The position numbers and the translations under genes are program-made. Positions 2,346 through 57,199 of a stretch of 64,000 nt of DNA are shown one piece after another. Each line of letters starts with the position of its first letter. Position 1 is the first letter of the stretch. The notes beneath the pieces were generated by a model. The model did no database searches and was not told the origin of the DNA. It was given only the letters and a program-made list of their open reading frames with translations. Source of the stretch: Isurus oxyrinchus (lineage: Eukaryota); assembly GCA_026770705.1 (NCBI GenBank), contig JANJGN010000029.1, positions 17,360,001 through 17,424,000 of the forward strand, written 5' to 3'.

Positions 2346-4828
2346 AGACTCCAACATTTTCCCAATGACAGATGTTAAACTAACTGGCCTTTAGTTACCT
2401 GTTTTTTGTCTCCCTCCCTTTTTGAATAAGGGTGTTACATTGGCAGTTTTCCAATCCTCTGGGACTTTTCCAGAATCTAAGGATTCTTGGAAGATTATTA
2501 CCAGTGCATCCACTATCTCTGTAGCTACTTCCTTTAATATCCTAGGATGCAACCCACCAGGTCCAGGGGACTTATCAACCTTTAGCCCCATTAGTTTCCC
2601 TAGTATTTTTTCTCTAGTGATAATTATTGTATTTATTTCCTCTTTTGCCCCTTGATTATTTAGTATTTTTTAATGCTATTAGTGTCTTCTACCGTGAAGA
2701 CTGAAGCAAAGTATTTATTCAACCCCTCTGCCATTTCCTGGTTCCCCTTATTATTTCCCCAGCCTCATTCTCTAAAAGGCCTATGTTCACTTTGGCCTCT
2801 CTCTTCCTTTTTATATATTTAAAGATGCTCTTACTGTCCGCTTTTATATTGCTTGCTTGTTTACCCTCAAAGTTAACTTTCCCCCTCTTCATTATTTTTT
2901 GTTCATCTTTTGTTGGTTTTTAAAACTTTCCCAATCCCCTGGCTTACCACTAATCTTTGCCACATTGGATATCTTTTCTTTTAATTTGATACTATCCTTA
3001 AGTTCCTTGGTTAACCATGGTTGGTTTATCCCCTACCTTGAATCCTTCTTCCTCACTGGGATTATCTTTGTTGTGAGTCATGAACTATTTTGTTAAACAA
3101 CGGTTCATCAACCGTTTTTTCTGCTAAAATCCTATCCCAGTTCACTCCAGCCAACTCTGCCCTCAGTCCTCTGTAATTACCCTTATTTAAGTTTAGCAGA
3201 GTTGCTTCCAACCCAAGTTTCTCACTCTCAAACTGAATGCTAAATTCTACCATATTATGATCATTGTTTCCTAGGGGATCCTTTACTCTGAGATTAGTTA
3301 TTAAATCTGCCTCATTACACATTACCAGATCCAAAATAGCTTGATCCTTGGTTGGATCTACAAAATATTGTTCTAGGAAACTGTCTCAAATACACTCTAT
3401 GAACTCTTGCTCGTGGCCATCTCTGCCAATTTTATTTTCCCAATCTACATGAAGGTTAAAGTCACCCATGATTAAAGTACTGACTTTTTTACATGCCCTC
3501 ATTATCTCCTGATTTATTCTCTGTCCTACAGGAAAGCTTCTGGTCAGGGGCCTACAGACTACTCCCACCAGTGTCTTCTTCCCCTTGTTATTTCTACCCT
3601 CCACTCATAAGGATTCTACATCTTCCGATCCAAGATCTTTCTTGCTATTGCACTTATTCCATCTCGTACTAACAAAGCTACCCCACCACCCTTTCCTCCC
3701 TGCCTGTCCTTTCGAAAAGTCACATACCCCTGAATATTTAGTTCCCAGCTTTGATCTCCTTGTAACCATGTCTCCTTAATGGCTATAAGATCATACCCAT
3801 TAACCTCTATTTGTGCCATTAATTCATTTATTTTGTTCCGGATACTACGTGCATTTATGTAAAGGGCCATTAATTTTGCCTTTTTACCATTTTTCCCCCC
3901 ATTGACCCTATTTGCTGTTTTTTTAAGCTTGGACACTCTGTCCCTTCCTGTCACACCCTGGGTATTTTACCTAAATAGCTGCCCTGCAAGACTGCCATGT
4001 CCTTTTGCTTTGTAAGCCTACATATCCCCTTTCCAGAACCCTCTCCCATTCTCTTTGTTTTAAACCTCTCTCTATAGCCCCAGTTATTCAGTCTGTCAGG
4101 ACACTGGTCTCAGCACAGTTCAAATGAAGCCAATCCCACCAGAACAGCTCTCTTCTACCCCAGTACTGGTGCCAGCGCCCCATGAATTGAAACCCAATCC
4201 TCCCACACCAATCTTTGAGCCACGCATTTAACTCCTTGACTTTATTTACCCTATGCCAGTTTACCCCTGGCTTAGGTAGTAATCCAGAGATTAATGCCTT
4301 GGAGGTTTTGCTTTTTAATTTGGCTCCTAACTGTTCAAATTCTTTCAGCAGAACCTCCTTTCTAGTCCTATCAATGTCGTTGGTACCAACATGGATGACG
4401 ACAACTGGATCCCTCCCCTCCTGCTCCGAGTTCCTCTCCAGTCCTGAAGAGATGCCCTTAACCCTGGCACCGGGCAGGCAACGCAGCCTTCGGGACTCAC
4501 GCTCATGGCTGCAGAAAACAGTATCTATCCCCCTAATTATACAGTCCCCTACCACTACTACACTCCCATTTCCTCCCCCCATTTGAATGCTCCCTGTACC
4601 ACGGTGCTGTGGTCAGTTCACTCAACCTCCCTTGCAGTTCCTGCTCTCACCCACACAGCTTGTAAGAACCTTGTAACTGCTGGACAGTTGCAGGGGCCGA
4701 GAGTCCTTGAATGCTCCCCCCCGCCGTGTCGCCATACCTGCTTCACCTGCAGTCACACCCTCCTGTCCCTGATCATAGGCCAAATTTGAATTACTTAATC
4801 TGAGAGGTGTGACCACCTCCTGGAGCAA
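2346..4828 (-). mobile_element. CR1-clade LINE, decayed: ORF1 SGNH/GDSL-like esterase, ORF2 AP endonuclease and linker; truncated before the RT core
   Basis: ORF fragments VVVVGDCIIRG...HVGTND (esterase), LYINARSIRNK, IMGDFNL, DHNMVEF and KSPGPGGLHPRILKE...PEDWKTANVTPLFKKG, broken by stops and frameshifts. Confidence 0.93.
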
Positions 4829-13334: not shown

Positions 13335-13789
13335 GTCTGTGACATCTTTTGATGATCTGTTTCTATCACTGCTTGCTTGTCCCTACAACCACACCAANNN
13401 NNNNNNNNNNNNNNNNNNNNNNNNNNNNNNNNNNNNNNNNNNNNNNNNNNNNNNNNNNNNNNNNNNNNNNNNNNNNNNNNNNNNNNNNNNNNNNNNNNNN
13501 NNNNNNNNNNNNNNNNNNNNNNNNNNNNNNNNNNNNNNNNNNNNNNNNNNNNNNNNNNNNNNNNNNNNNNNNNNNNNNNNNNNNNNNNNNNNNNNNNNNN
13601 NNNNNNNNNNNNNNNNNNNNNNNNNNNNNNNNNNNNNNNNTTCCTATGTCTACTTAGTTCTGTCGAAGGGTCATGAGGACTCGAAACGTCAACTCTTTTC
13701 TTCTCCGCCGATGCTGCCAGACCTGCTGAGCTTTTCCAGGTAATTCTGTTTTTGTTTTGGATTTCCAGCATCCGCAGTTTTTTGTTTTT
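13335..13789 (+). mobile_element. Young Penelope-type short element spanning the assembly gap, with 13-bp TSD
   Basis: Direct repeat agcctataatatt at 13322-13334 and 13790-13802. The 3' part is nearly identical to 37166-37300 and includes ctgtcga-agggtc-atgag-gactc-gaaacgtc. Confidence 0.7.
13398..13640. other. Assembly gap (243 N)
   Basis: Run of N. Confidence 1.
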
Positions 13790-32400: not shown

Positions 32401-33784
32401 TGGCTGCAACCATTATTGTTTCTAATAGAGCTGAGATGATAAATTATCCTGTGCTGTTAGAAGTTATATTTATCACAAATCAATCATAGAAAAAAAAAAT
32501 AGTTTTTAATTCTACGCATCTTTTAGGTTTGTTTTAAGGATGACCTTACCAACAACTACATCAAAGTAAAAATGTCAGACTTGGGTCCATTATAATTTTT
32601 TCCCCTAAAGGCGACACGGATTCAATGCATGTATTTTATTAAATATTTATGCAAATTCTGCATTCTATCTGGGACACTTGGCAATTTGGTTGGTTTAGAG
32701 AAGCTGAATTTTCATCTTATTGCTCCTAATAATTTCTACTGCAGGCAAATTCTTTTAAAAAGGCTCATTAGTAAAAGTGTTGCTGAACCCTGATCAAGGT
32801 CTTATGCTCTGGGGCATCTCTCTGACTCTTTCAAACCTTTGACCAAGCGTTTTGTAATCCCTCCTACTACAACCACCTCTCTTTGGCTCAGTGTCAATTT
32901 TTGACTGACACTCCTGTGGAACACCTGAGGTTATGTTTCTATATTAAAGGCACTATGTAAATGCAGTTTGTTCTTTCATCTAAACAATCTTTCAGTTCAT
33001 CACTTCAAACCCTAGGCAAGAGTGCGTTTCTGACAAAAATGATCAGTTTTGCATGATTTCCTATTGTTTGGAATTCTTATTCTGAGCATTAAAAAAATGG
33101 ACAATGGCCAAGGTTTTCACCCGAATGAGGAAACAATGGGCTGTGACTCGGTTTGTTCCAATGCCTGATTTGGATTGGAACCATATTCTACTTGGTGACC
33201 TTTTCCCTTTTGCATGAAAATATTACAAGGTAATTTAAAAAAAAATAATTTACAAGCTATCATATTGGGACAGCAGTCAACAAAAGTGAAATGATTAATC
33301 CTATCTATTTCTTCACTGCAGTTAATATTCTGAAGATATTGTTTCCTGCCCTTTTTGCGGGATTAGGCCTTTTCTCTCTCTCTCACGCTCTTCCTTTACT
33401 CTCTCTCCTATCCCTCCCCTCTACTGTACCCTATTAAATCATGTTGAGCATGAAGTGATGGACAGAGACCTTTGGCAGGGTTGAGAACAATAGGCAAGAT
33501 TAAAGCAGTCACCTCTCCCACCCTGAAGCAGGAATCCTCAATTCAGAATCAGTTGGGTAACATCCGAACTGGCATCTGACCTTACAGATTTTTTTTTGTG
33601 AAAAAATACTTTATAAAATATCTGGAATAAAATATCTAAATGGCCATCACAAAAAGTGCAATCAGATTCAACTTTTACACAGGGATAACGAGGTGCTTCA
33701 GTACAATCAAGGAATATTACAATCATTCCAATGTGGTCATCACAGGCAGTCAGACAACTTCAATACCATTGCACTATCAACATA

Positions 33785-34167
33785 GGGCTTGGCCTAAATG
33801 GCCAAGTGGTTATGGTACTGGGTTTGTAACCCCAAGATCAAGAGTTCAAATCTCACAATGGCAAACTATGAAACAATGTGACTTCATCTGAGACAGATGG
33901 AAATGGGTTTGTACTCGAAAGAGTTACACCTTGCTTAAGGGCTTGGCCTAAATAGCCAAGTGGTTATGGTACTGGGTTTGTAACCCCAAGATCCAGAGTT
34001 CAAATCTCACAATGGCAAAACTGTGAAACAATGTAACTTCATCTGAAACAGATGGAAACGGGTTTGTGCTCGAAAGAGTATCAAGAGTTCAAATCTCACA
34101 ATGGCAAAACTGTGAAACAATGTAACTTCATCTGAAACAGATGGAAACGGGTTTGTACTCGAAAGAA
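33785..34167 (+). mobile_element. Multimeric tRNA-Thr(UGU)-derived SINE-like retroposon (two full units plus one 5'-truncated unit), 9-bp TSD
   Basis: A box TGGCCAAGTGG, anticodon loop TTTGTAA, B box GTTCAAATC. Units start at 33785, 33939 and 34080. TSD atcaacata at 33776-33784 and 34168-34176. Confidence 0.85.
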
Positions 34168-37067
34168 ATCAACATACATCATGTTGCACTCTGAGATGCT
34201 TCAATACAATTTGTATTTGATGCATACATTCATTGTGAGCTGTACAGGCACCTGGCCTTACAGATAGTGTCAGAATGACTACACCCTGCGAAAGGTGGGC
34301 CTGTGGCTGTTGTGTGACTGTTGCTGTTGTCAATAATTATGATATTCTGGTGATTGTTACTGAGTGAGGACTTGGTGCTTAGGCACTCCCAATGGTTTAT
34401 CACCCCCCCACCCCCACCCCCCCAGCAGTTTGTTTAGAGCTGAAATCAAAAAAAGGGGATGGTAGTACAAAGTCTCTGCGACTAGTTTTTCTGGAAACTG
34501 AGGAGGGTGTGGGAATATTTAAATGACACCTTTTGCCCTGTTGAACACTTCAACTTTTGTGTCGGTGAAGTGCGGAGCCAGCATTGCGTTAACACAGCGG
34601 GAAGTCTGAGCACCTTGGATCAGTTGAAAACAGGTTCATGGTTTTGTGGTTTCGAGACGTGAGGTTGCACGATAGGCTGCTAAGGGGAGATGTGTTGGCG
34701 CTGTTCAGAATGGAGGGGCTTCAACAGAGTAAATCAGGATAAACTGTTTCCACTGGCAGGAGGATGGGTAACTAGAGGACGCGGGTAATTGATAGTTGGT
34801 TGGGAATTGGGGGAAGGATGAGAATTTTTAAGCAGTAAGTTGTTGTGACCTCGAATGCGTCGCCTAAAAGGGCGGTGAAAGCAGATTCATCTGTAACTGT
34901 TGAGGGAATTGGATATATTATACTTGGAAAGATTTGCACATTTCCAAATTTGGAATAGAGTGGTAGAGTAAAATTAATTGATTGGAGAGCTCTTGGAAAG
35001 ATGGGCTGAAGTGCTGCCTCCTGTATGACTCTCTAATAATATTCCGAGTTCTCTCTGCCTATTTAGATGGATGTCACAGACCCCATGCTGTTATTTGAAG
35101 AAGAGCATGTTCTTCTGAGATACTGGAGCTGAATACACTGGAGAGAGAAAGCCAAGGGACTATTGGTTTGATTTTTAATAGGCAATGATTATTTCCCCTG
35201 GTTAGTGTTGTTGGGATTAGTTGTCGAGGTAGGTTTGGATTAGGATTATTTTTAGGGGTGTAAAGTGAGAAGTAGAAGAAACCTTTTCAAAGCTGTGAGA
35301 ATATTCACTTTGTTCCCACAAGAAGCGACTAAATCAGAAAAAGTTTAAGAGGGAGTTCGATAAACGATTTGGATAGGGGGCGTGGGATGTTAATGGTTGG
35401 TTGTGCGCTCTCCCATACCTGCGTTTTCTTGCACCCCACACACCATTATACCAGCACCATTTCTGAAGAATTAGCTGAGCCGTTCCTTCAGCTGCCTGCA
35501 CCCTGAGCTCTGGAATTTCGTCTCTAAATCTCTCCGCGCCTCTACTTCTCTCCTTTTTAAGAATTTCCTTAAAATCTATCTCTTTGATCAAGCTTTTAAT
35601 TATCTGTCACAATATCTCGTTCATGGTCCAATTCTCAAACTGTGGTAATGCTCCTGTGATGCTGGGATGTTGCATTTTAGTATATAAATGTTCAGGGGCA
35701 CCGATAATTCAAACCCATGGCTGTTGCAAAGGACAGGATTCCACTATGCCAAACAAGTGTCATCACAACCTCACTGCTTTGGCTGTTGGTGCTGACCCTG
35801 TGCATTGGCAGGTGTGGAAGACGCCAGTGTGAGATACTCACTCTGATTCCATGCATTGACACATGGGCCCTGAGGCGCTACAGTCTCACATACCCAGCGA
35901 GTATCCAGAAAAAAACTGATGCTCCTGTTTTGGTAAACAACGCCTGGTTCATTAACTCATTATCCGGTTTGTCAAGTTGGTGCTGAAATTAGTAATTTGG
36001 AGCTTGCATTAAGAGTTAGACTATACACAAAAGCAAAATGCTACAGATGCTGGAAATCTCAAATGTAGATAGAAAGTAGTGGAAGCACTTAGGCCAGGCA
36101 ACATTGGAGGAGGGGAGAAGAGATTTGTAAGGAAAGGTAGGAGCAGGGGGAGCAGGAGTAGGCCATTCGGCCCCTCAAGCCTGCTCCCCCATGCAATAAG
36201 ATGGCTGATCTGATTGTTGTATTGAGTCCAATTTCTTGCCTGTCCCCATAACCCTTGACTCCCTTGTGGATCAAAAATATGTCTAACTCGGCCCTGAATA
36301 TATTCAATGGCCCAATTATATTGACTCTCTGGGTGGAACCTATTCCCATTTCATAAGCCTGCACTCCTAACCAGCGAGTTTCAGCTTTTAAGTGCTTTGG
36401 TTGACATGCTCTGGGACTGAAACAAAGAATTTTTTTTTCTCCCTCCTCATCTGTCCAGTTCTCATTTCCTGTTTGATGCAGTTGAGTTCAGTAGGAAATG
36501 GCTGAATAACCTGCCAAATGGGTTTCTGTTTCCTGTGCTTTGGCTGCTCATTGTCACAAGGTAGGGGATTTGGTTGGGAACTGGTGGGGGCAAAGGGGGC
36601 AAACAAATATCAGGACTCAGCTGAGCTACTGATGTTTATTTTCTGGGAGGGGGGCTGTGGGGAAGGCAGTGGCATTGGGTTCATCTCTGCCAACCATGTG
36701 ATGCTTTCGTTCGCGTTCGTCTGCAAAGTCTTCTGAATAAATGACCACACTTCAGACATACTTCATTGGCTGCCAAGCGCTTTGAGACATCCTGAAGTCA
36801 TGAAAGGTGCTATGTAAATGCAGGTCCCTTGTCTCTGGGACTTGTTTCTGATTTTTTTTTCATTATCTTTCAATAAGGCACCAGCAATTTTCTGATCCCG
36901 TGTTTAGTGTGGTTATAATGGAGGAGCCACAATCCTGAGATGTTTAGACTTTCTTTATCCACATTTTCTATCCTTCCAAAGACCTGGGCCTGTGCTGCTT
37001 TTTTATTTTTGCATTGTGGGTCCATGGGTCTTCTGCTATCTACAGTGGCAGACACTTCTCCCATAGT

Positions 37068-45144: not shown

Positions 45145-45500
45145 ACACTAGTGTAGTGACCGTGTCACTGGGCTAGCAATCCAGAGGCCCAGGCTAATGC
45201 TCTGGGGATGGGGGGGGTTCAAATCCCATTGTGACAGCTGGTGCAATTTAAGTTCAGTCTGGTCTCAGTTTCGCCATCATTATATTAAATTGTCCCAAAA
45301 AACCCATCTGGTTCATGAATGTCCTTCAGGGAAGGAAATCTGCTGGCCTTACCTGGTCTGGCCTACATGTGACTCTAGGCCCACAGGATTGTGGTTGACT
45401 CTTAACCACCCTCTGAAATGGCCTAGCAAGCCAGCAGCTCGCACACAATTAGGCATGGGCAGCAAATGCTGGTCATGCCAGCAACATTCACATCCCTTGC
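45145..45500 (+). mobile_element. tRNA-derived SINE with LINE-like tail
   Basis: Same architecture as 47770-48150. Confidence 0.8.
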
Positions 45501-55196: not shown

Positions 55197-57199
55197 GTGT
55201 AACTGTTTAATGATTAAACTCTCTTCTGCCCAGTCTCGCAGCCCCCCCTACCCAATCCTGATAGCCCAAGGCTATTTAATTCAGCACTCTGTGTTTACCA
55301 GCTGTGCCATGCTGCAGTGTGGTTTCTATGGAGACCCGTCAGCAGAGAAGGGCGTTGGGCGGGGGGTGGGATTGGGGGAAGGGAAATGCTCCGGGACATG
55401 ATTGGGAGTATTCCTGCAGAGAAACCTGATGTTCTCCATGCTGCTGGCCAGGGCTTTTTTTTTCCATAGCATTTTAGTGGTGGTGCACGTGGCATGTACG
55501 TTGTCCACTAGTGTGGCTGGGAGACAGAAAGGAAAACTTGTCATGTGCTCTCCGAGCTTCCTGAATGAAACCATTTCCCCCACCATCAGGACACCACGGA
55601 CAAACTATGGAATGATTTAAGATGATTGGTAGTAGGATTAGAGGAAAAACTACTTCACCCAGAGGGTGGTGGGTGTTTGGAATTCGCTGCCTGGTTTGTT
55701 GGTGGAGGCAGAATCCCTCAACTCATTTAAAAGGCACCTAGATCAGCACCTAGAGTGCTGTAACCTGCAAGGCTACCGACCAGGTGCGGGAAGGTGGGAT
55801 TAAAATGGGCAGCTAGGTTTTGTTTTCAGCCAGTGCAGACGTGATGGGCTGAATGGCCTCTTTCTGTGCCGTAACTTTTCCATGGCTCCATGCCGCAATT
55901 TGCCAAGGTCGCCGTGCCAACACCTCGCTCTCTACCCTCTGCCCTCGAACACAGATGAAAGCAGCCATGTCATCAGAAAGTTGTTGCTGGTGTTTGTCAG
56001 TCAGCCTTCCTCAACACCCTGGGACCAATGTTCTGGAAATCCCTGCCCAGCAACCATCAAAGGCATCAGTGGTTCAGGGTGAAACCAGGCAGTAAACAAA
56101 GCATTGTCCACGTCCCAAAGCCAAATTATAACATTTGGGTCTCCACCTGCTCAACCACCTCTAGATTTCTGAGGAACTGACAGGGCTACTATTAATTTGA
56201 ACTGGTGGAGGTTTGAAGTTTAGGTGTTTCCTGAAGGGACTGACTATCGAACAGACCAAGGTGGTGGTGTGTGTGGCATTTACTCTGGTGAGACATTAAA
56301 CTGCAACTCCCTCTGCCCTCCTTGGTGCTTCGGCTGGACCTTTGCTTCTCTTGATATAATTCCACAGGTTGGCAGGGCCTTCTCCCTATTTCTTGGCCAA
56401 CTTTCGCTCCTCAGGCAAAAATGGATGGACAAACGGGTGATTGTCCCCTCAGTGTGGGCCCTGCTGTGTACAAAATGCATAGTTGTGCCTGGAGATTTGT
56501 TGTGTGAAGCATTGAGAGAATGAGTTACAGGGAGGTTTCCCTCTTGGACGGTTCACCTTTTTCTGTCTTTTCTACTCTTTCTCTCACGCTCTCTTCTCTC
56601 CCTTTTCTTCTCTGTGTCTCTCTCTCTCTCTCTCTCTGTGTCAGTCTGTGTGTCTCAGTTATGCTTAATGCTAAGCTGACCTCGTGCATCTTTCATCGCG
56701 ATTATGGATGATAATTCCTACATTTTAAATGGAGATTGGCTGAATTGTTCCTTTAGAGTTACATGCACCATCCAAAGCAGACAGTCTCCAGCTTGAGCCC
56801 TGGGCAGAGTGCGGCTGCTGTAATTAGCCAAAGAGTTTGTTGGGTTGGGGGTGAAGAATGAGCGAGGCTTGCTGCTCCCTAACTCTGCGGTGGTCTGTCG
56901 TTTATGGGGAAGGGATCAGGTTCACGTTTGGCTATGATGCTGCAATGGTCCTGTAGCCCACGATCTTGGCAATTCAAGGGATAAATGGCCTGGTTATTTG
57001 AATGAGGAGAAGGGGAACAGCAGTGAATGTCACCTTCTCTGGGGTGAGGGAGGGAGTGTGGAGGCAGTTGGAGGGAATCTTGTCTTATGGTTGTTGGTGT
57101 GGGATGGTGTGATGACAGCAATGGATGAGTCGGACACCAGGCAGTGAAGGCAGATGGCTGGGGTAGGAAGCTATTTTGTTATTGGCACCGGATGAGACG

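What the first reader, a model, noticed from the sequence alone, without database searches (positions are those of the whole stretch)
33776..34176. Tail-less, multimeric tRNA-Thr-derived retroposon inserted as one event, ending in a three-way-junction RNA
Seen: one 9-bp TSD (atcaacata) encloses unit 1, unit 2 (154-bp period) and a 5'-truncated unit 3 (89-bp period). Each unit ends near ...actcgaaagag(ttaca), with no poly(A) or microsatellite tail and no TTTT Pol III terminator. The 3' 50 nt fold into a compact three-way junction: closing stem TGT(A/G)ACT/AGTTACA, hairpin CATCTG-a(a/g)a-CAGATG, hairpin (C/T)GGGT-ttgt-(A/G)CTCG, joined by AAA linkers. Differences between units fall in loops or give G-U pairs. 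Inference: the pattern (truncated 3'-most copy, then full copies) fits successive end-to-end template jumps by an RT or copying of a multimeric/circular RNA. The junction may be an RT-recognition, 3'-processing or ribozyme-like element. I do not recognise this family, and it is the best candidate here for an undescribed system.
Basis: partly seen in the sequence, partly recalled or inferred. Interest (0 to 1): 0.8.

Follow-up and report, generated by a model that had tools for sequence, protein, structure and literature searches.

The report
Stacked tail-less shark SINE copies
This is a small pile-up of two and a half copies of a very abundant, tail-less, tRNA-like jumping element, probably built by repeated or multi-template reverse transcription at a favoured site; it is a neat but not unprecedented piece of transposon biology.

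Summary
The sequence facts hold. A 9-bp duplication (atcaacata, 33776-33784 and 34168-34176) encloses unit 1, a 10-bp linker, unit 2 and a headless unit 3. There is no A-tail, no microsatellite and no T4 run.

Laying contigs of four public runs shows a very abundant family in two related species.
- Copies start at G(G)GCTTGG and end at GAGTTACA, followed by unrelated flank. The family really is tail-less.
- Other loci also carry unit-to-unit junctions.
- Other loci repeat the junction "SINE 3' end | ATCAAGAG", just 5' of the B box.
- The genomic target here also begins ATCAA.

I read the array as a retrotransposition-built stack at a preferred nick or priming site. A dimer with a family-level linker came first, and one headless unit was added. 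A single event with template jumps remains a live rival.

The three-way junction can be drawn, but:
- it is not the predicted best fold;
- only unit 1 has its closing stem;
- it shows no compensatory change;
- it matches no Rfam ribozyme.

The closest precedent is the Tx1-mobilised SINEU of crocodilians. Other agents of this scan noted the same Tx1/tRNA-Thr SINE system on other pieces of this genome. The partner LINE could not be checked here.

The parts
33776..33784 (+). left copy of the 9-bp target-site duplication atcaacata
   Evidence: Paralogous copies of the flanking repeat carry a single ATCAACATA (loose ends before 34168).
33785..33928 (+). unit 1: full-length SINE (gggcttgg ... gagttaca), 144 bp
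   Evidence: The family 5' end at 33939-33941 and 3' end at 33928 come from loose ends.
33799..33809 (+). A-box-like TGGCCAAGTGG of unit 1 (unit 2 has TAGCCAAGTGG)
   Evidence: Read. The consensus TRGCNNAGTGG is recalled, not from a call.
33842..33854 (+). B-box-like GAGTTCAAATCTC (T arm) of unit 1
   Evidence: alignment to Rfam tRNA. The B-box consensus is recalled.
33877..33928 (+). 3' domain of unit 1: two hairpins plus a possible closing stem
33929..33938 (+). 10-bp linker ccttgcttaa between units 1 and 2; not family body, but recurs at other loci
   Evidence: tables 3, 4 and 8. Summed contig depth is about 58,000-114,000 here, against 26.5 in single-copy flank. The reference letter dominates at each position, and bridging contigs exist in all four runs.
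33939..34079 (+). unit 2: full 5' end; 3' end stops at gagt (lacks taca)
34080..34166 (+). unit 3: headless unit starting at ATCAAGAG (unit position 53) and ending at cgaaaga (lacks gttaca)
   Evidence: Other copies run on with GTTACA after 34166 (table 7).
34167..34167 (+). one extra a between unit 3 and the duplication
34168..34176 (+). right copy of the 9-bp target-site duplication
33640..33775 (.). left flank: part of another interspersed repeat, the target
   Evidence: tables 2 and 8 (many contigs on 33640-33757); 20-mer at 33756-33775 lies on the minus strand.
34177..34237 (.). right flank: continuation of the same target repeat
   Evidence: table 2 (depth about 287,000 up to 34214, then down to 26.5 by 34261) and table 7 (loose ends behind 34211).

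Best explanation
The locus holds two and a half copies of a very abundant SINE found in this genome and a sister species. Other agents' notes call the genome a shark; I did not verify that.

Anatomy of the SINE:
- a tRNA-Thr-like head with A and B boxes, of about 72 nt;
- a short linker and a structured tail of about 50 nt;
- a fixed end, GAGTTACA, with no A-rich or repeat tail.

How I think the array arose. It was built by the reverse-transcription machinery of the partner LINE, in more than one step.
1. A dimer (unit 1, the family-level 10-nt linker, then a second unit) inserted into another repeat at |ATCAACATA. This made the 9-bp duplication.
2. A further copy was primed at the family's recurrent internal site |ATCAAGAG, just 5' of the B box of the second unit.
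3. Its 5' junction was resolved on the resident head by homology. That left no extra head and no new duplication, so the product looks like a headless third unit.

Shown:
- the family ends and the absence of a tail;
- the abundance;
- the recurrence of unit-to-unit and headless junctions at other loci;
- ATCAA at both right-hand junctions;
- different 3' truncations of the three units.

Inferred:
- the order and number of events;
- homology-based 5' resolution;
- that the partner is the Tx1-type LINE noted elsewhere in this genome;
- that the 3' hairpins are what its reverse transcriptase recognises.
For: Family abundance and ends:
- 23,677 contigs of X1 (organism A) and 10,194 of X6 (organism B) lay on the stretch at 80% likeness or more.
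- Loose ends behind 33928 (57 contigs, agreement 0.34) show unrelated flank after the 3' end.
- Loose ends behind 34166 (93 contigs) read GTTACA and then unrelated letters.
- Loose ends before 33941 (53 contigs, agreement 0.38) mark the 5' end.

Recurrent headless junction (table 5; 15 rows shown, 144 not shown). Joints into 34080 come from:
- 33928: 6 contigs in X1 and 4 in X6;
- 33927: 2 contigs in X1;
- 33920: 1 contig in X1.

Other points:
- Bridging contigs across the unit 1 to unit 2 junction occur in all four runs (table 8, records 5-8, 16, 22-23, 29-30). The reference linker letters dominate by depth (table 3).
- Both right-hand junctions are followed by ATCAA. Two random 5-mers agree with probability 0.0013.
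- Against plain duplication: units 2 and 3 differ by 2 substitutions in the shared 85 nt, yet end differently (gagt against ga+a). Unit 2's end follows the family consensus for two more letters.
- Precedent: Tx1-mobilised SINEU-3 copies pile up in tandem by sequential insertion. Tx1-Mar LINEs share heads with their SINEs (PMC4494074, passages and sections 16-18 read).
Against: - No internal target-site duplication marks a second event. The single outer duplication is what a one-event model predicts.
- Most family copies are not followed by ATCAA. Loose-end consensus after the 3' end has agreement of only 0.34-0.45, so any site preference is partial.
- The joints rest on short contigs (shorter side 20-27 letters) laid at 80% likeness. 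The tables are truncated. Amplification of one composite copy could mimic independent recurrence.
- Units 2 and 3 belong to the same subfamily, sharing 5 states against unit 1. That also fits reuse of one template, or local duplication.
- No LINE with this tail is in the window. The Tx1 link therefore rests on unchecked or only partly checked notes by other agents.
Confidence: 0.45

Rival explanations
1. One integration event with template switching.
1. Target-primed reverse transcription started on one SINE RNA.
2. It left that RNA at position 53 for the 3' region of a second RNA of the same subfamily.
3. It ran to that RNA's 5' end, including a 10-nt leader, or continued along a dimeric RNA.
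4. It finished on or through unit 1, giving one 9-bp duplication.
For: - A single duplication flush with both ends, and no internal duplications.
- Unit 1 has complete ends. Units 2 and 3 are near-identical.
- Other loci have tandem units with unrelated short spacers (table 5c), as expected from 5' leaders or added letters at jumps.
- Kojima 2015 invokes template jump for 5' extensions of Tx1-mobilised SINEs.
Against: - It gives no reason why the switch point (|ATCAAGAG) matches the start of the genomic target (|ATCAACATA).
- It gives no reason why the same switch point recurs at other loci in two species.
- The acceptor ends are truncated by 4 and 6 nt rather than being exact RNA ends.
Confidence: 0.3
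2. An ordinary insertion, monomer or dimer, followed by local DNA-level tandem duplication. Replication slippage or unequal exchange between the two ATCAA microhomologies 88-89 bp apart would create unit 3.
For: - ATCAA sits at both ends of the 89-bp period.
- Units 2 and 3 are 97% alike.
- A follow-up agent found local tandem events at another locus of this system (s1-871382).
Against: - The duplicated ends should be identical. They differ by a substitution and a 1-nt length change within 3 nt, while the other 85 nt differ at only 2 places. Unit 2's version follows the family consensus further.
- The same junction with other 3' end lengths exists at other loci.
Confidence: 0.15
3. A retrozyme-like element. 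A roughly 154-nt RNA is cut by a ribozyme in the 3' junction, circularised, and copied by rolling-circle reverse transcription into multimers.
For: - A constant 154-bp period with a recurrent linker.
- No terminator and no tail.
- The tail is more stable than shuffles (z -3.15).
Against: - No Rfam ribozyme family matches at E up to 10 in 33000-35000.
- GAAA is present, but the recalled hammerhead core CUGAUGA is absent on either strand (read).
- Most copies are monomers with fixed 5' and 3' ends and unrelated flanks.
- The unit 2 to unit 3 junction breaks the rolling-circle register.
Confidence: 0.04

Closest known systems
SINEU families mobilised by Tx1-Mar LINEs in crocodilians (Kojima 2015, PMC4494074)
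   Same: - Short non-autonomous retroposons that share a target preference with Tx1-clade LINEs.
- They insert into another transposon family.
- They are often found in tandem through sequential insertion.
- They have heads that some Tx1 families also carry.
- They show 5' extensions ascribed to template jump or 5' transduction.
   Different: - The head here is tRNA-Thr-like with Pol III boxes, not U1/U2 snRNA.
- A favoured site lies inside the SINE's own head.
- Spacers between tandem units are not copies of the target duplication.
- The Tx1 link was not verified in this window.
Classical tRNA-derived (SINE2) stringent-type SINEs with a LINE-derived 3' stem-loop (SINEBase definitions, PMC3531059)
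   Same: - tRNA-like head.
- Short body.
- Structured 3' region that plausibly mimics a LINE tail.
- High copy number.
- Target-site duplication.
   Different: SINEBase defines a 3' tail of simple repeats as a typical module. This family ends bluntly at GAGTTACA.
Dimeric or complex SINEs (e.g. dimeric Alu, SINEU-1D)
   Same: Two SINE units joined by a fixed short linker and propagated as a unit, as the recurrent linker suggests.
   Different: - Only about 2-4% of summed depth carries the linker.
- Whether the dimer is itself a master copy is not shown.
Tailless retropseudogenes of mammals (Schmitz et al. 2004, as described in PMC3747384)
   Same: tRNA-related retrocopies without a poly(A) tail (passage).
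   Different: Those are low-copy and 3'-truncated at varying points. This family has a fixed 3' end and very high copy number.
Hammerhead-bearing retrozymes and Penelope-like elements
   Same: Tandem, tail-less units.
   Different: - No ribozyme match.
- No similarity of the unit to the rest of the window.

Membership tests
tRNA-derived SINE (SINE2) | head derived from a tRNA, with internal Pol III A and B boxes | tested here: met
   Rfam tRNA 24.2 and 22.4 bits, below the gathering score of 29. Full-length alignment with anticodon loop UGU. A box TGGCCAAGTGG fits the recalled consensus. The B box matches about 8 of 11 positions (read). ARAGORN is negative.
tRNA-derived SINE (SINE2) | short interspersed repeat with at least 100 copies | tested here: met
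   23,677 contigs (X1) and 10,194 (X6) laid, with unrelated flanks at both ends.
tRNA-derived SINE (SINE2) | 3' tail of A-rich or simple repeats | tested here: not met
   Copies end at GAGTTACA followed by unrelated sequence (table 7). The locus has no such tail.
tRNA-derived SINE (SINE2) | 3' end shared with a partner LINE | not testable with these tools
Public contig scans were blank.
tRNA-derived SINE (SINE2) | transcribed by RNA polymerase III | not testable with these tools
   Contigs of runs guessed to be RNA hold the family (250 and 384 laid). Contigs cannot show starts, ends or strand.
Tx1-mobilised target-preferring SINE (as SINEU) | insertion-site preference shared with a Tx1-clade LINE | not tested
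   Only notes by other agents (s1-871665 and s1-871382 followed up; s1-897377 and s1-868823 first-reader only).
Tx1-mobilised target-preferring SINE (as SINEU) | recurrent insertion at one site, giving tandem copies | tested here: inconclusive
   Joints into 34080 in 9 contigs of X1 and 4 of X6, among 15 shown rows of 159. ATCAA at both right-hand junctions. Most 3' flanks show no common motif.
Tx1-mobilised target-preferring SINE (as SINEU) | snRNA-derived head (defines SINEU itself) | tested here: not met
   The head is tRNA-like. It is therefore not a SINEU, only an analogue.
Self-cleaving ribozyme / retrozyme | match to a known ribozyme covariance model or catalytic core | tested here: not met
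   No ribozyme among 8 matches at E up to 10. CUGAUGA is absent (read; the motif is recalled).
Self-cleaving ribozyme / retrozyme | circular RNA form | not testable with these tools
   Only contigs were available.
Conserved three-way-junction RNA element | pairs kept through compensatory changes | tested here: not met
   0 of 18 pairs changed on both sides. 2 pairs changed on one side to G-U. 500 of 500 shuffles did as well (3 sequences only). Family variants at the hairpin base lie in CpG sites (table 3).

The most novel reading that the evidence does not exclude
The SINE and its LINE partner home to a site inside the SINE's own tRNA-like head. Priming occurs on read-through RNA that still carries the downstream ATCAA of its source. 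Copies would therefore be both cargo and target, and arrays of headless units would grow by themselves. The blunt, tRNA-like 3' junction would be the handle that replaces a tail.
Probability: 0.25. Interest if true: 0.6.

Novelty: new variant of a known kind. Interest (0 to 1): 0.4.

Why it matters
If the self-targeting reading holds, it would be a clear vertebrate case of a Pol III-type SINE that carries the preferred insertion site of its own mobilising LINE.

That would explain how tandem SINE arrays and satellite-like repeats can be seeded by retrotransposition. It would also extend the Tx1/SINEU story from crocodilians to cartilaginous fishes.

The fixed tail-less 3' end would give a compact RNA for asking how a Tx1-type reverse transcriptase picks its template.

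As a single locus it is an ordinary product of that family.

Tried and rejected
- Other copies or a partner LINE in the window: none. BLAST of unit 1, a 36-mer, the 12-nt tail (one 1-mismatch hit at 56518, within chance) and a 15-mer seen upstream of AAAGAGT in other contigs found nothing more.
- Public contig collections: blank for two patterns in metagenome, genome and viral contigs. These hold little or no fish DNA, so the blanks say nothing about novelty.
- Known ribozyme or other RNA family: only weak tRNA matches.
- Covariation: three sequences only, none found. Family variants are mostly transitions at CpG sites and cannot be phased.
- Coding content of the flanks: no convincing ORF. 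Pfam on 7 ORFs of 150 aa or more gave V-set and GDSL/esterase only. No reverse transcriptase near the locus.
- Literature:
  - No paper in the held library contains any of four 15-18-mers of the unit.
  - Searches for Tx1/SINE/shark terms found no description of this family.
  - Repbase, Dfam and SINEBase sequences could not be searched here, so 'not described' is not established.
  - Supplementary figures of PMC4494074 (target-site data) were not seen.
- Papers, and what I saw of each:
  - PMC4494074: abstract, passages, and sections 16, 17 and 18 in full.
  - PMC3747384, PMC8455134, PMC5381603, PMC3531059: passages only.
  - PMC3706591: one passage.
  - All others: search listing only.
- Recalled, not from any call: A/B-box consensus, the hammerhead core, microhomology-mediated 5' junctions, and annealing of read-through transcripts in R1/R2-type elements. 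The last is also mentioned in section 18 of PMC4494074.
Full report
**What is in the sequence.**

The layout is as follows.

| Coordinates | Feature |
|---|---|
| 33776-33784 | 9-mer atcaacata (left copy) |
| 33785-33928 | unit 1, gggcttgg...gagttaca, 144 bp |
| 33929-33938 | linker ccttgcttaa, 10 bp |
| 33939-34079 | unit 2, full 5' end, stops at ...cgaaagagt |
| 34080-34166 | unit 3, starts at atcaagag (unit position 53), stops at ...cgaaaga |
| 34167 | one extra a |
| 34168-34176 | 9-mer atcaacata (right copy) |

- TRF reports period 154 (1.9 copies, 94% matches) and period 89 (2.0 copies, 97%).
- BLAST of unit 1 against the 64 kb finds only these three units at meaningful E-values.
- A 9-mer direct repeat at an offset of 300-499 occurs in 104 of 12,668,100 position pairs in this window. 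The flush duplication is therefore not chance.
- No run of four or more T occurs between 33700 and 34486.
- The head aligns end to end with the Rfam tRNA model at 24.2 and 22.4 bits, below the gathering score of 29. The anticodon loop is UUUGUAA (UGU, Thr). ARAGORN does not call it.
- The A box (TGGCCAAGTGG, 33799-33809) fits the recalled consensus. The B box (33842-33854) is degenerate.

**What the family looks like elsewhere.**

One search found runs of the source organism (A) and of a relative (B, about 0.41 of the sampled words). I laid Logan contigs of X1 (A, DNA), X6 (B, DNA) and X15 and X16 (guessed RNA) on 33640-34320 at 80% likeness.

- Contigs laid: 23,677 (X1), 10,194 (X6), 250 (X15) and 384 (X16).
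- Summed contig depth over the units is 0.6-6.3 million in X1, against 26.5 in the single-copy right flank. The tool warns this is not a copy number. I take it only as 'very abundant'.
- Loose ends place the family's 3' end at 33928. Fifty-seven X1 contigs continue with unrelated letters (agreement 0.34).
- After 34166, 93 X1 contigs read GTTACA and then unrelated letters.
- The 5' end is at 33939-33941. Fifty-three X1 and 55 X6 contigs have unrelated letters before it.
- The canonical element is therefore about 142-144 bp, G(G)GCTTGG...GAGTTACA, with no tail of any kind.

**Multi-unit forms are a family trait.**

- Contigs bridging a unit's 3' end into the next unit's 5' end appear in all four runs (table 8, records 5-8, 16, 22-23, 29-30).
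- Over the linker (33929-33939) the summed depth is 58,000-114,000 in X1 and about 15,000-67,000 in X6. At each position the listed alternative letters take only about 10-21% of depth, except at 33929 (table 3).
- The linker, or something close to it, therefore recurs at many loci in both species. This points to a dimeric subfamily or a subfamily with a fixed 5' leader. The contigs cannot tell which.
- Table 5c also shows tandem units with other, unrelated spacers of 1-25 letters.

**The headless junction recurs.**

Table 5 shows 15 rows; 144 more are not shown. Among the shown rows:

- Joints into 34080, the first letter of ATCAAGAG, come from 33928 (6 contigs X1, 4 X6), 33927 (2 X1) and 33920 (1 X1).
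- Three X1 and three X6 contigs go from 33928 to 34073 with 8 letters between.
- These are SINE 3' ends of different completeness joined to the same nucleotide just 5' of the B box.
- Ten of the 15 shown rows are a different type: an upstream unit broken at 33855-33886 and followed by a new 5' end. The family therefore also lands in its own A-rich middle, and self-insertion is not confined to one site.

In this locus both right-hand junctions are followed by ATCAA: ATCAAGAGT inside the SINE and ATCAACATA in the target. Two random 5-mers agree with probability 0.0013. Against a strict site rule, the 3' flanks of most copies show no common motif (agreement 0.34-0.45).

**The target.**

- Both flanks belong to another repeat, with high depth at 33640-33757 and 34169-34214.
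- Copies of that repeat without the SINE read ...CAGACAGTGCAATGGTATTGGAGTT directly before a single ATCAACATA (59 X1 and 48 X6 loose ends before 34168, agreement about 0.7). This serves as a paralogous empty site and supports the duplication.
- Oddly, the 20-mer that precedes the left duplication copy here (33756-33775) is the reverse complement of that consensus, with 1 mismatch. I cannot explain this small inversion.

**The 3' structure.**

- The 52-nt tail of unit 1 folds better than shuffles (z -3.15; 1 of 200 shuffles as good).
- The best fold is a long irregular hairpin at -16.2 kcal/mol.
- In full-length folds, the CAUCUG/CAGAUG hairpin (8 bp with its neighbours) forms in all three units. 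The 3' end does not form the closing stem.
- Units 2 and 3 lack the 3' strand of that stem.
- On the three tails, 0 of 18 pairs show a change on both sides and 2 show a one-sided change to G-U. Shuffles do as well (500 of 500).
- RNAalifold keeps only the two hairpins.
- Family-level variants at the base of the second hairpin (33904/34059 T or C; 34072 G or A) lie in CpG sites. A G-to-T variant at 33906, about 23% of depth, would break a pair (table 3).
- No ribozyme family of Rfam matches at E up to 10.
- The two hairpins are therefore plausible. The junction and any catalytic role are unsupported.

**How the array arose.**

- Units 2 and 3 share five states against unit 1 in the common 85 nt. 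They differ from each other at two positions and at their 3' ends.
- *Plain DNA duplication* between the two ATCAA motifs predicts identical ends. Instead, gagt and ga+a differ by a substitution and a length change within 3 nt, and unit 2's version follows the family consensus further. With the recurrence of the junction elsewhere, I put plain duplication at about 0.15.
- *One event with template jumps* explains the single duplication and the complete ends of unit 1. It does not explain the shared ATCAA or the recurrent switch point. I put it at about 0.3.
- *Stacking (my preferred reading, about 0.45)*: a linker-dimer inserted at |ATCAACATA. Then a further copy was primed at |ATCAAGAG of the second unit, with its 5' end resolved on the resident head by homology. 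That adds a headless-looking unit without a new duplication.
- A variant that fits both models: read-through RNA from a source copy carries the downstream AUCAA, and a nicked target ending ...TTGAT-3' anneals to it. A joint from 34172 back to 33997, with one letter between (table 5c), hints that the cgaaagaa|ATCAA junction itself is inherited.
- All of this is inference. The shown facts are the ends, the junctions and their recurrence.

**Partner and precedent.**

- No LINE is present at the locus, and none in the window shares the tail.
- Other agents' notes on other pieces of this genome describe Tx1-type LINEs that end at the same nucleotide of the tRNA-like unit. They also describe stacks of Tx1 and this SINE in a Harbinger-like transposon, and call the genome a shark. 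Of these, s1-871382 and s1-871665 were followed up; s1-897377, s1-868823, s1-897345 and s1-900665 are first-reader notes only. I could not test any of this here.
- Kojima 2015 (PMC4494074) describes the same kind of system in crocodilians:
  - SINEU families share a target, a Mariner family, with Tx1-Mar LINEs.
  - Tandem SINEU-3 copies arise from sequential insertion.
  - Tx1 families carry the same heads as the SINEs.
  - 5' extensions are ascribed to template jump or 5' transduction.
- Tx1 L1-like repeats are reported in whale shark and Callorhinchus (PMC8455134, passage).
- I found no paper describing this SINE. Repbase, Dfam and SINEBase could not be searched.

**Verdict.**

This is a real, tail-less, tRNA-Thr-like SINE family with a habit of piling up on itself. 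This locus is one such pile.

- It is a new variant of a known kind: an analogue of the Tx1/SINEU system with a Pol III head and a target inside itself.
- It is not a new class and not a ribozyme.
- The scan has found the same system before on other DNA of this genome.

Noticed in passing
window 33756-33775: The 20-mer just before the left duplication copy is the reverse complement (1 mismatch) of the sequence that other copies of the flanking repeat carry at that place. It is a precise 20-bp inversion next to the insertion, and I cannot explain it.
   Followed up: partly
window 33640-33757 and 34168-34237: The flanks belong to another high-copy interspersed repeat. It has no convincing ORF and no other copy in the window at E of 0.01 or below. 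It may be the Harbinger-like target named in other agents' notes; I did not test this.
   Followed up: partly
window 34073 (table 7): Nine X1 and 15 X6 contigs carry a conserved ...TTTGGTTTTCATTTA directly before AAAGAGT+ATCAAGAG. This may be the 3' end of a different element, perhaps the partner LINE or another SINE, ending in the same last letters at the same site. It is absent from the window.
   Followed up: partly
window 33812-33828 against 33897-33913: The second 3' hairpin (GGGTTTGTACT) resembles the anticodon arm of the head (GGGTTTGTAAC), 15 of 17 identical. The tail may itself descend from a tRNA-Thr fragment.
   Followed up: no
window about 2067 (+): A reverse-transcriptase fragment with an FADD motif, interrupted by stops: a LINE remnant.
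   Followed up: no
window 4091-4582 (-): A 164-aa ORF matching the GDSL-like lipase/esterase domain (E 1.4e-08). By recall, this domain is seen in ORF1 of CR1/L2-type LINEs.
   Followed up: no
window 45163-45238 (+): ARAGORN calls a tRNA-Ile (AAT) gene, the only tRNA call in the window.
   Followed up: no
window 13398-13640: A run of 243 N.
   Followed up: no
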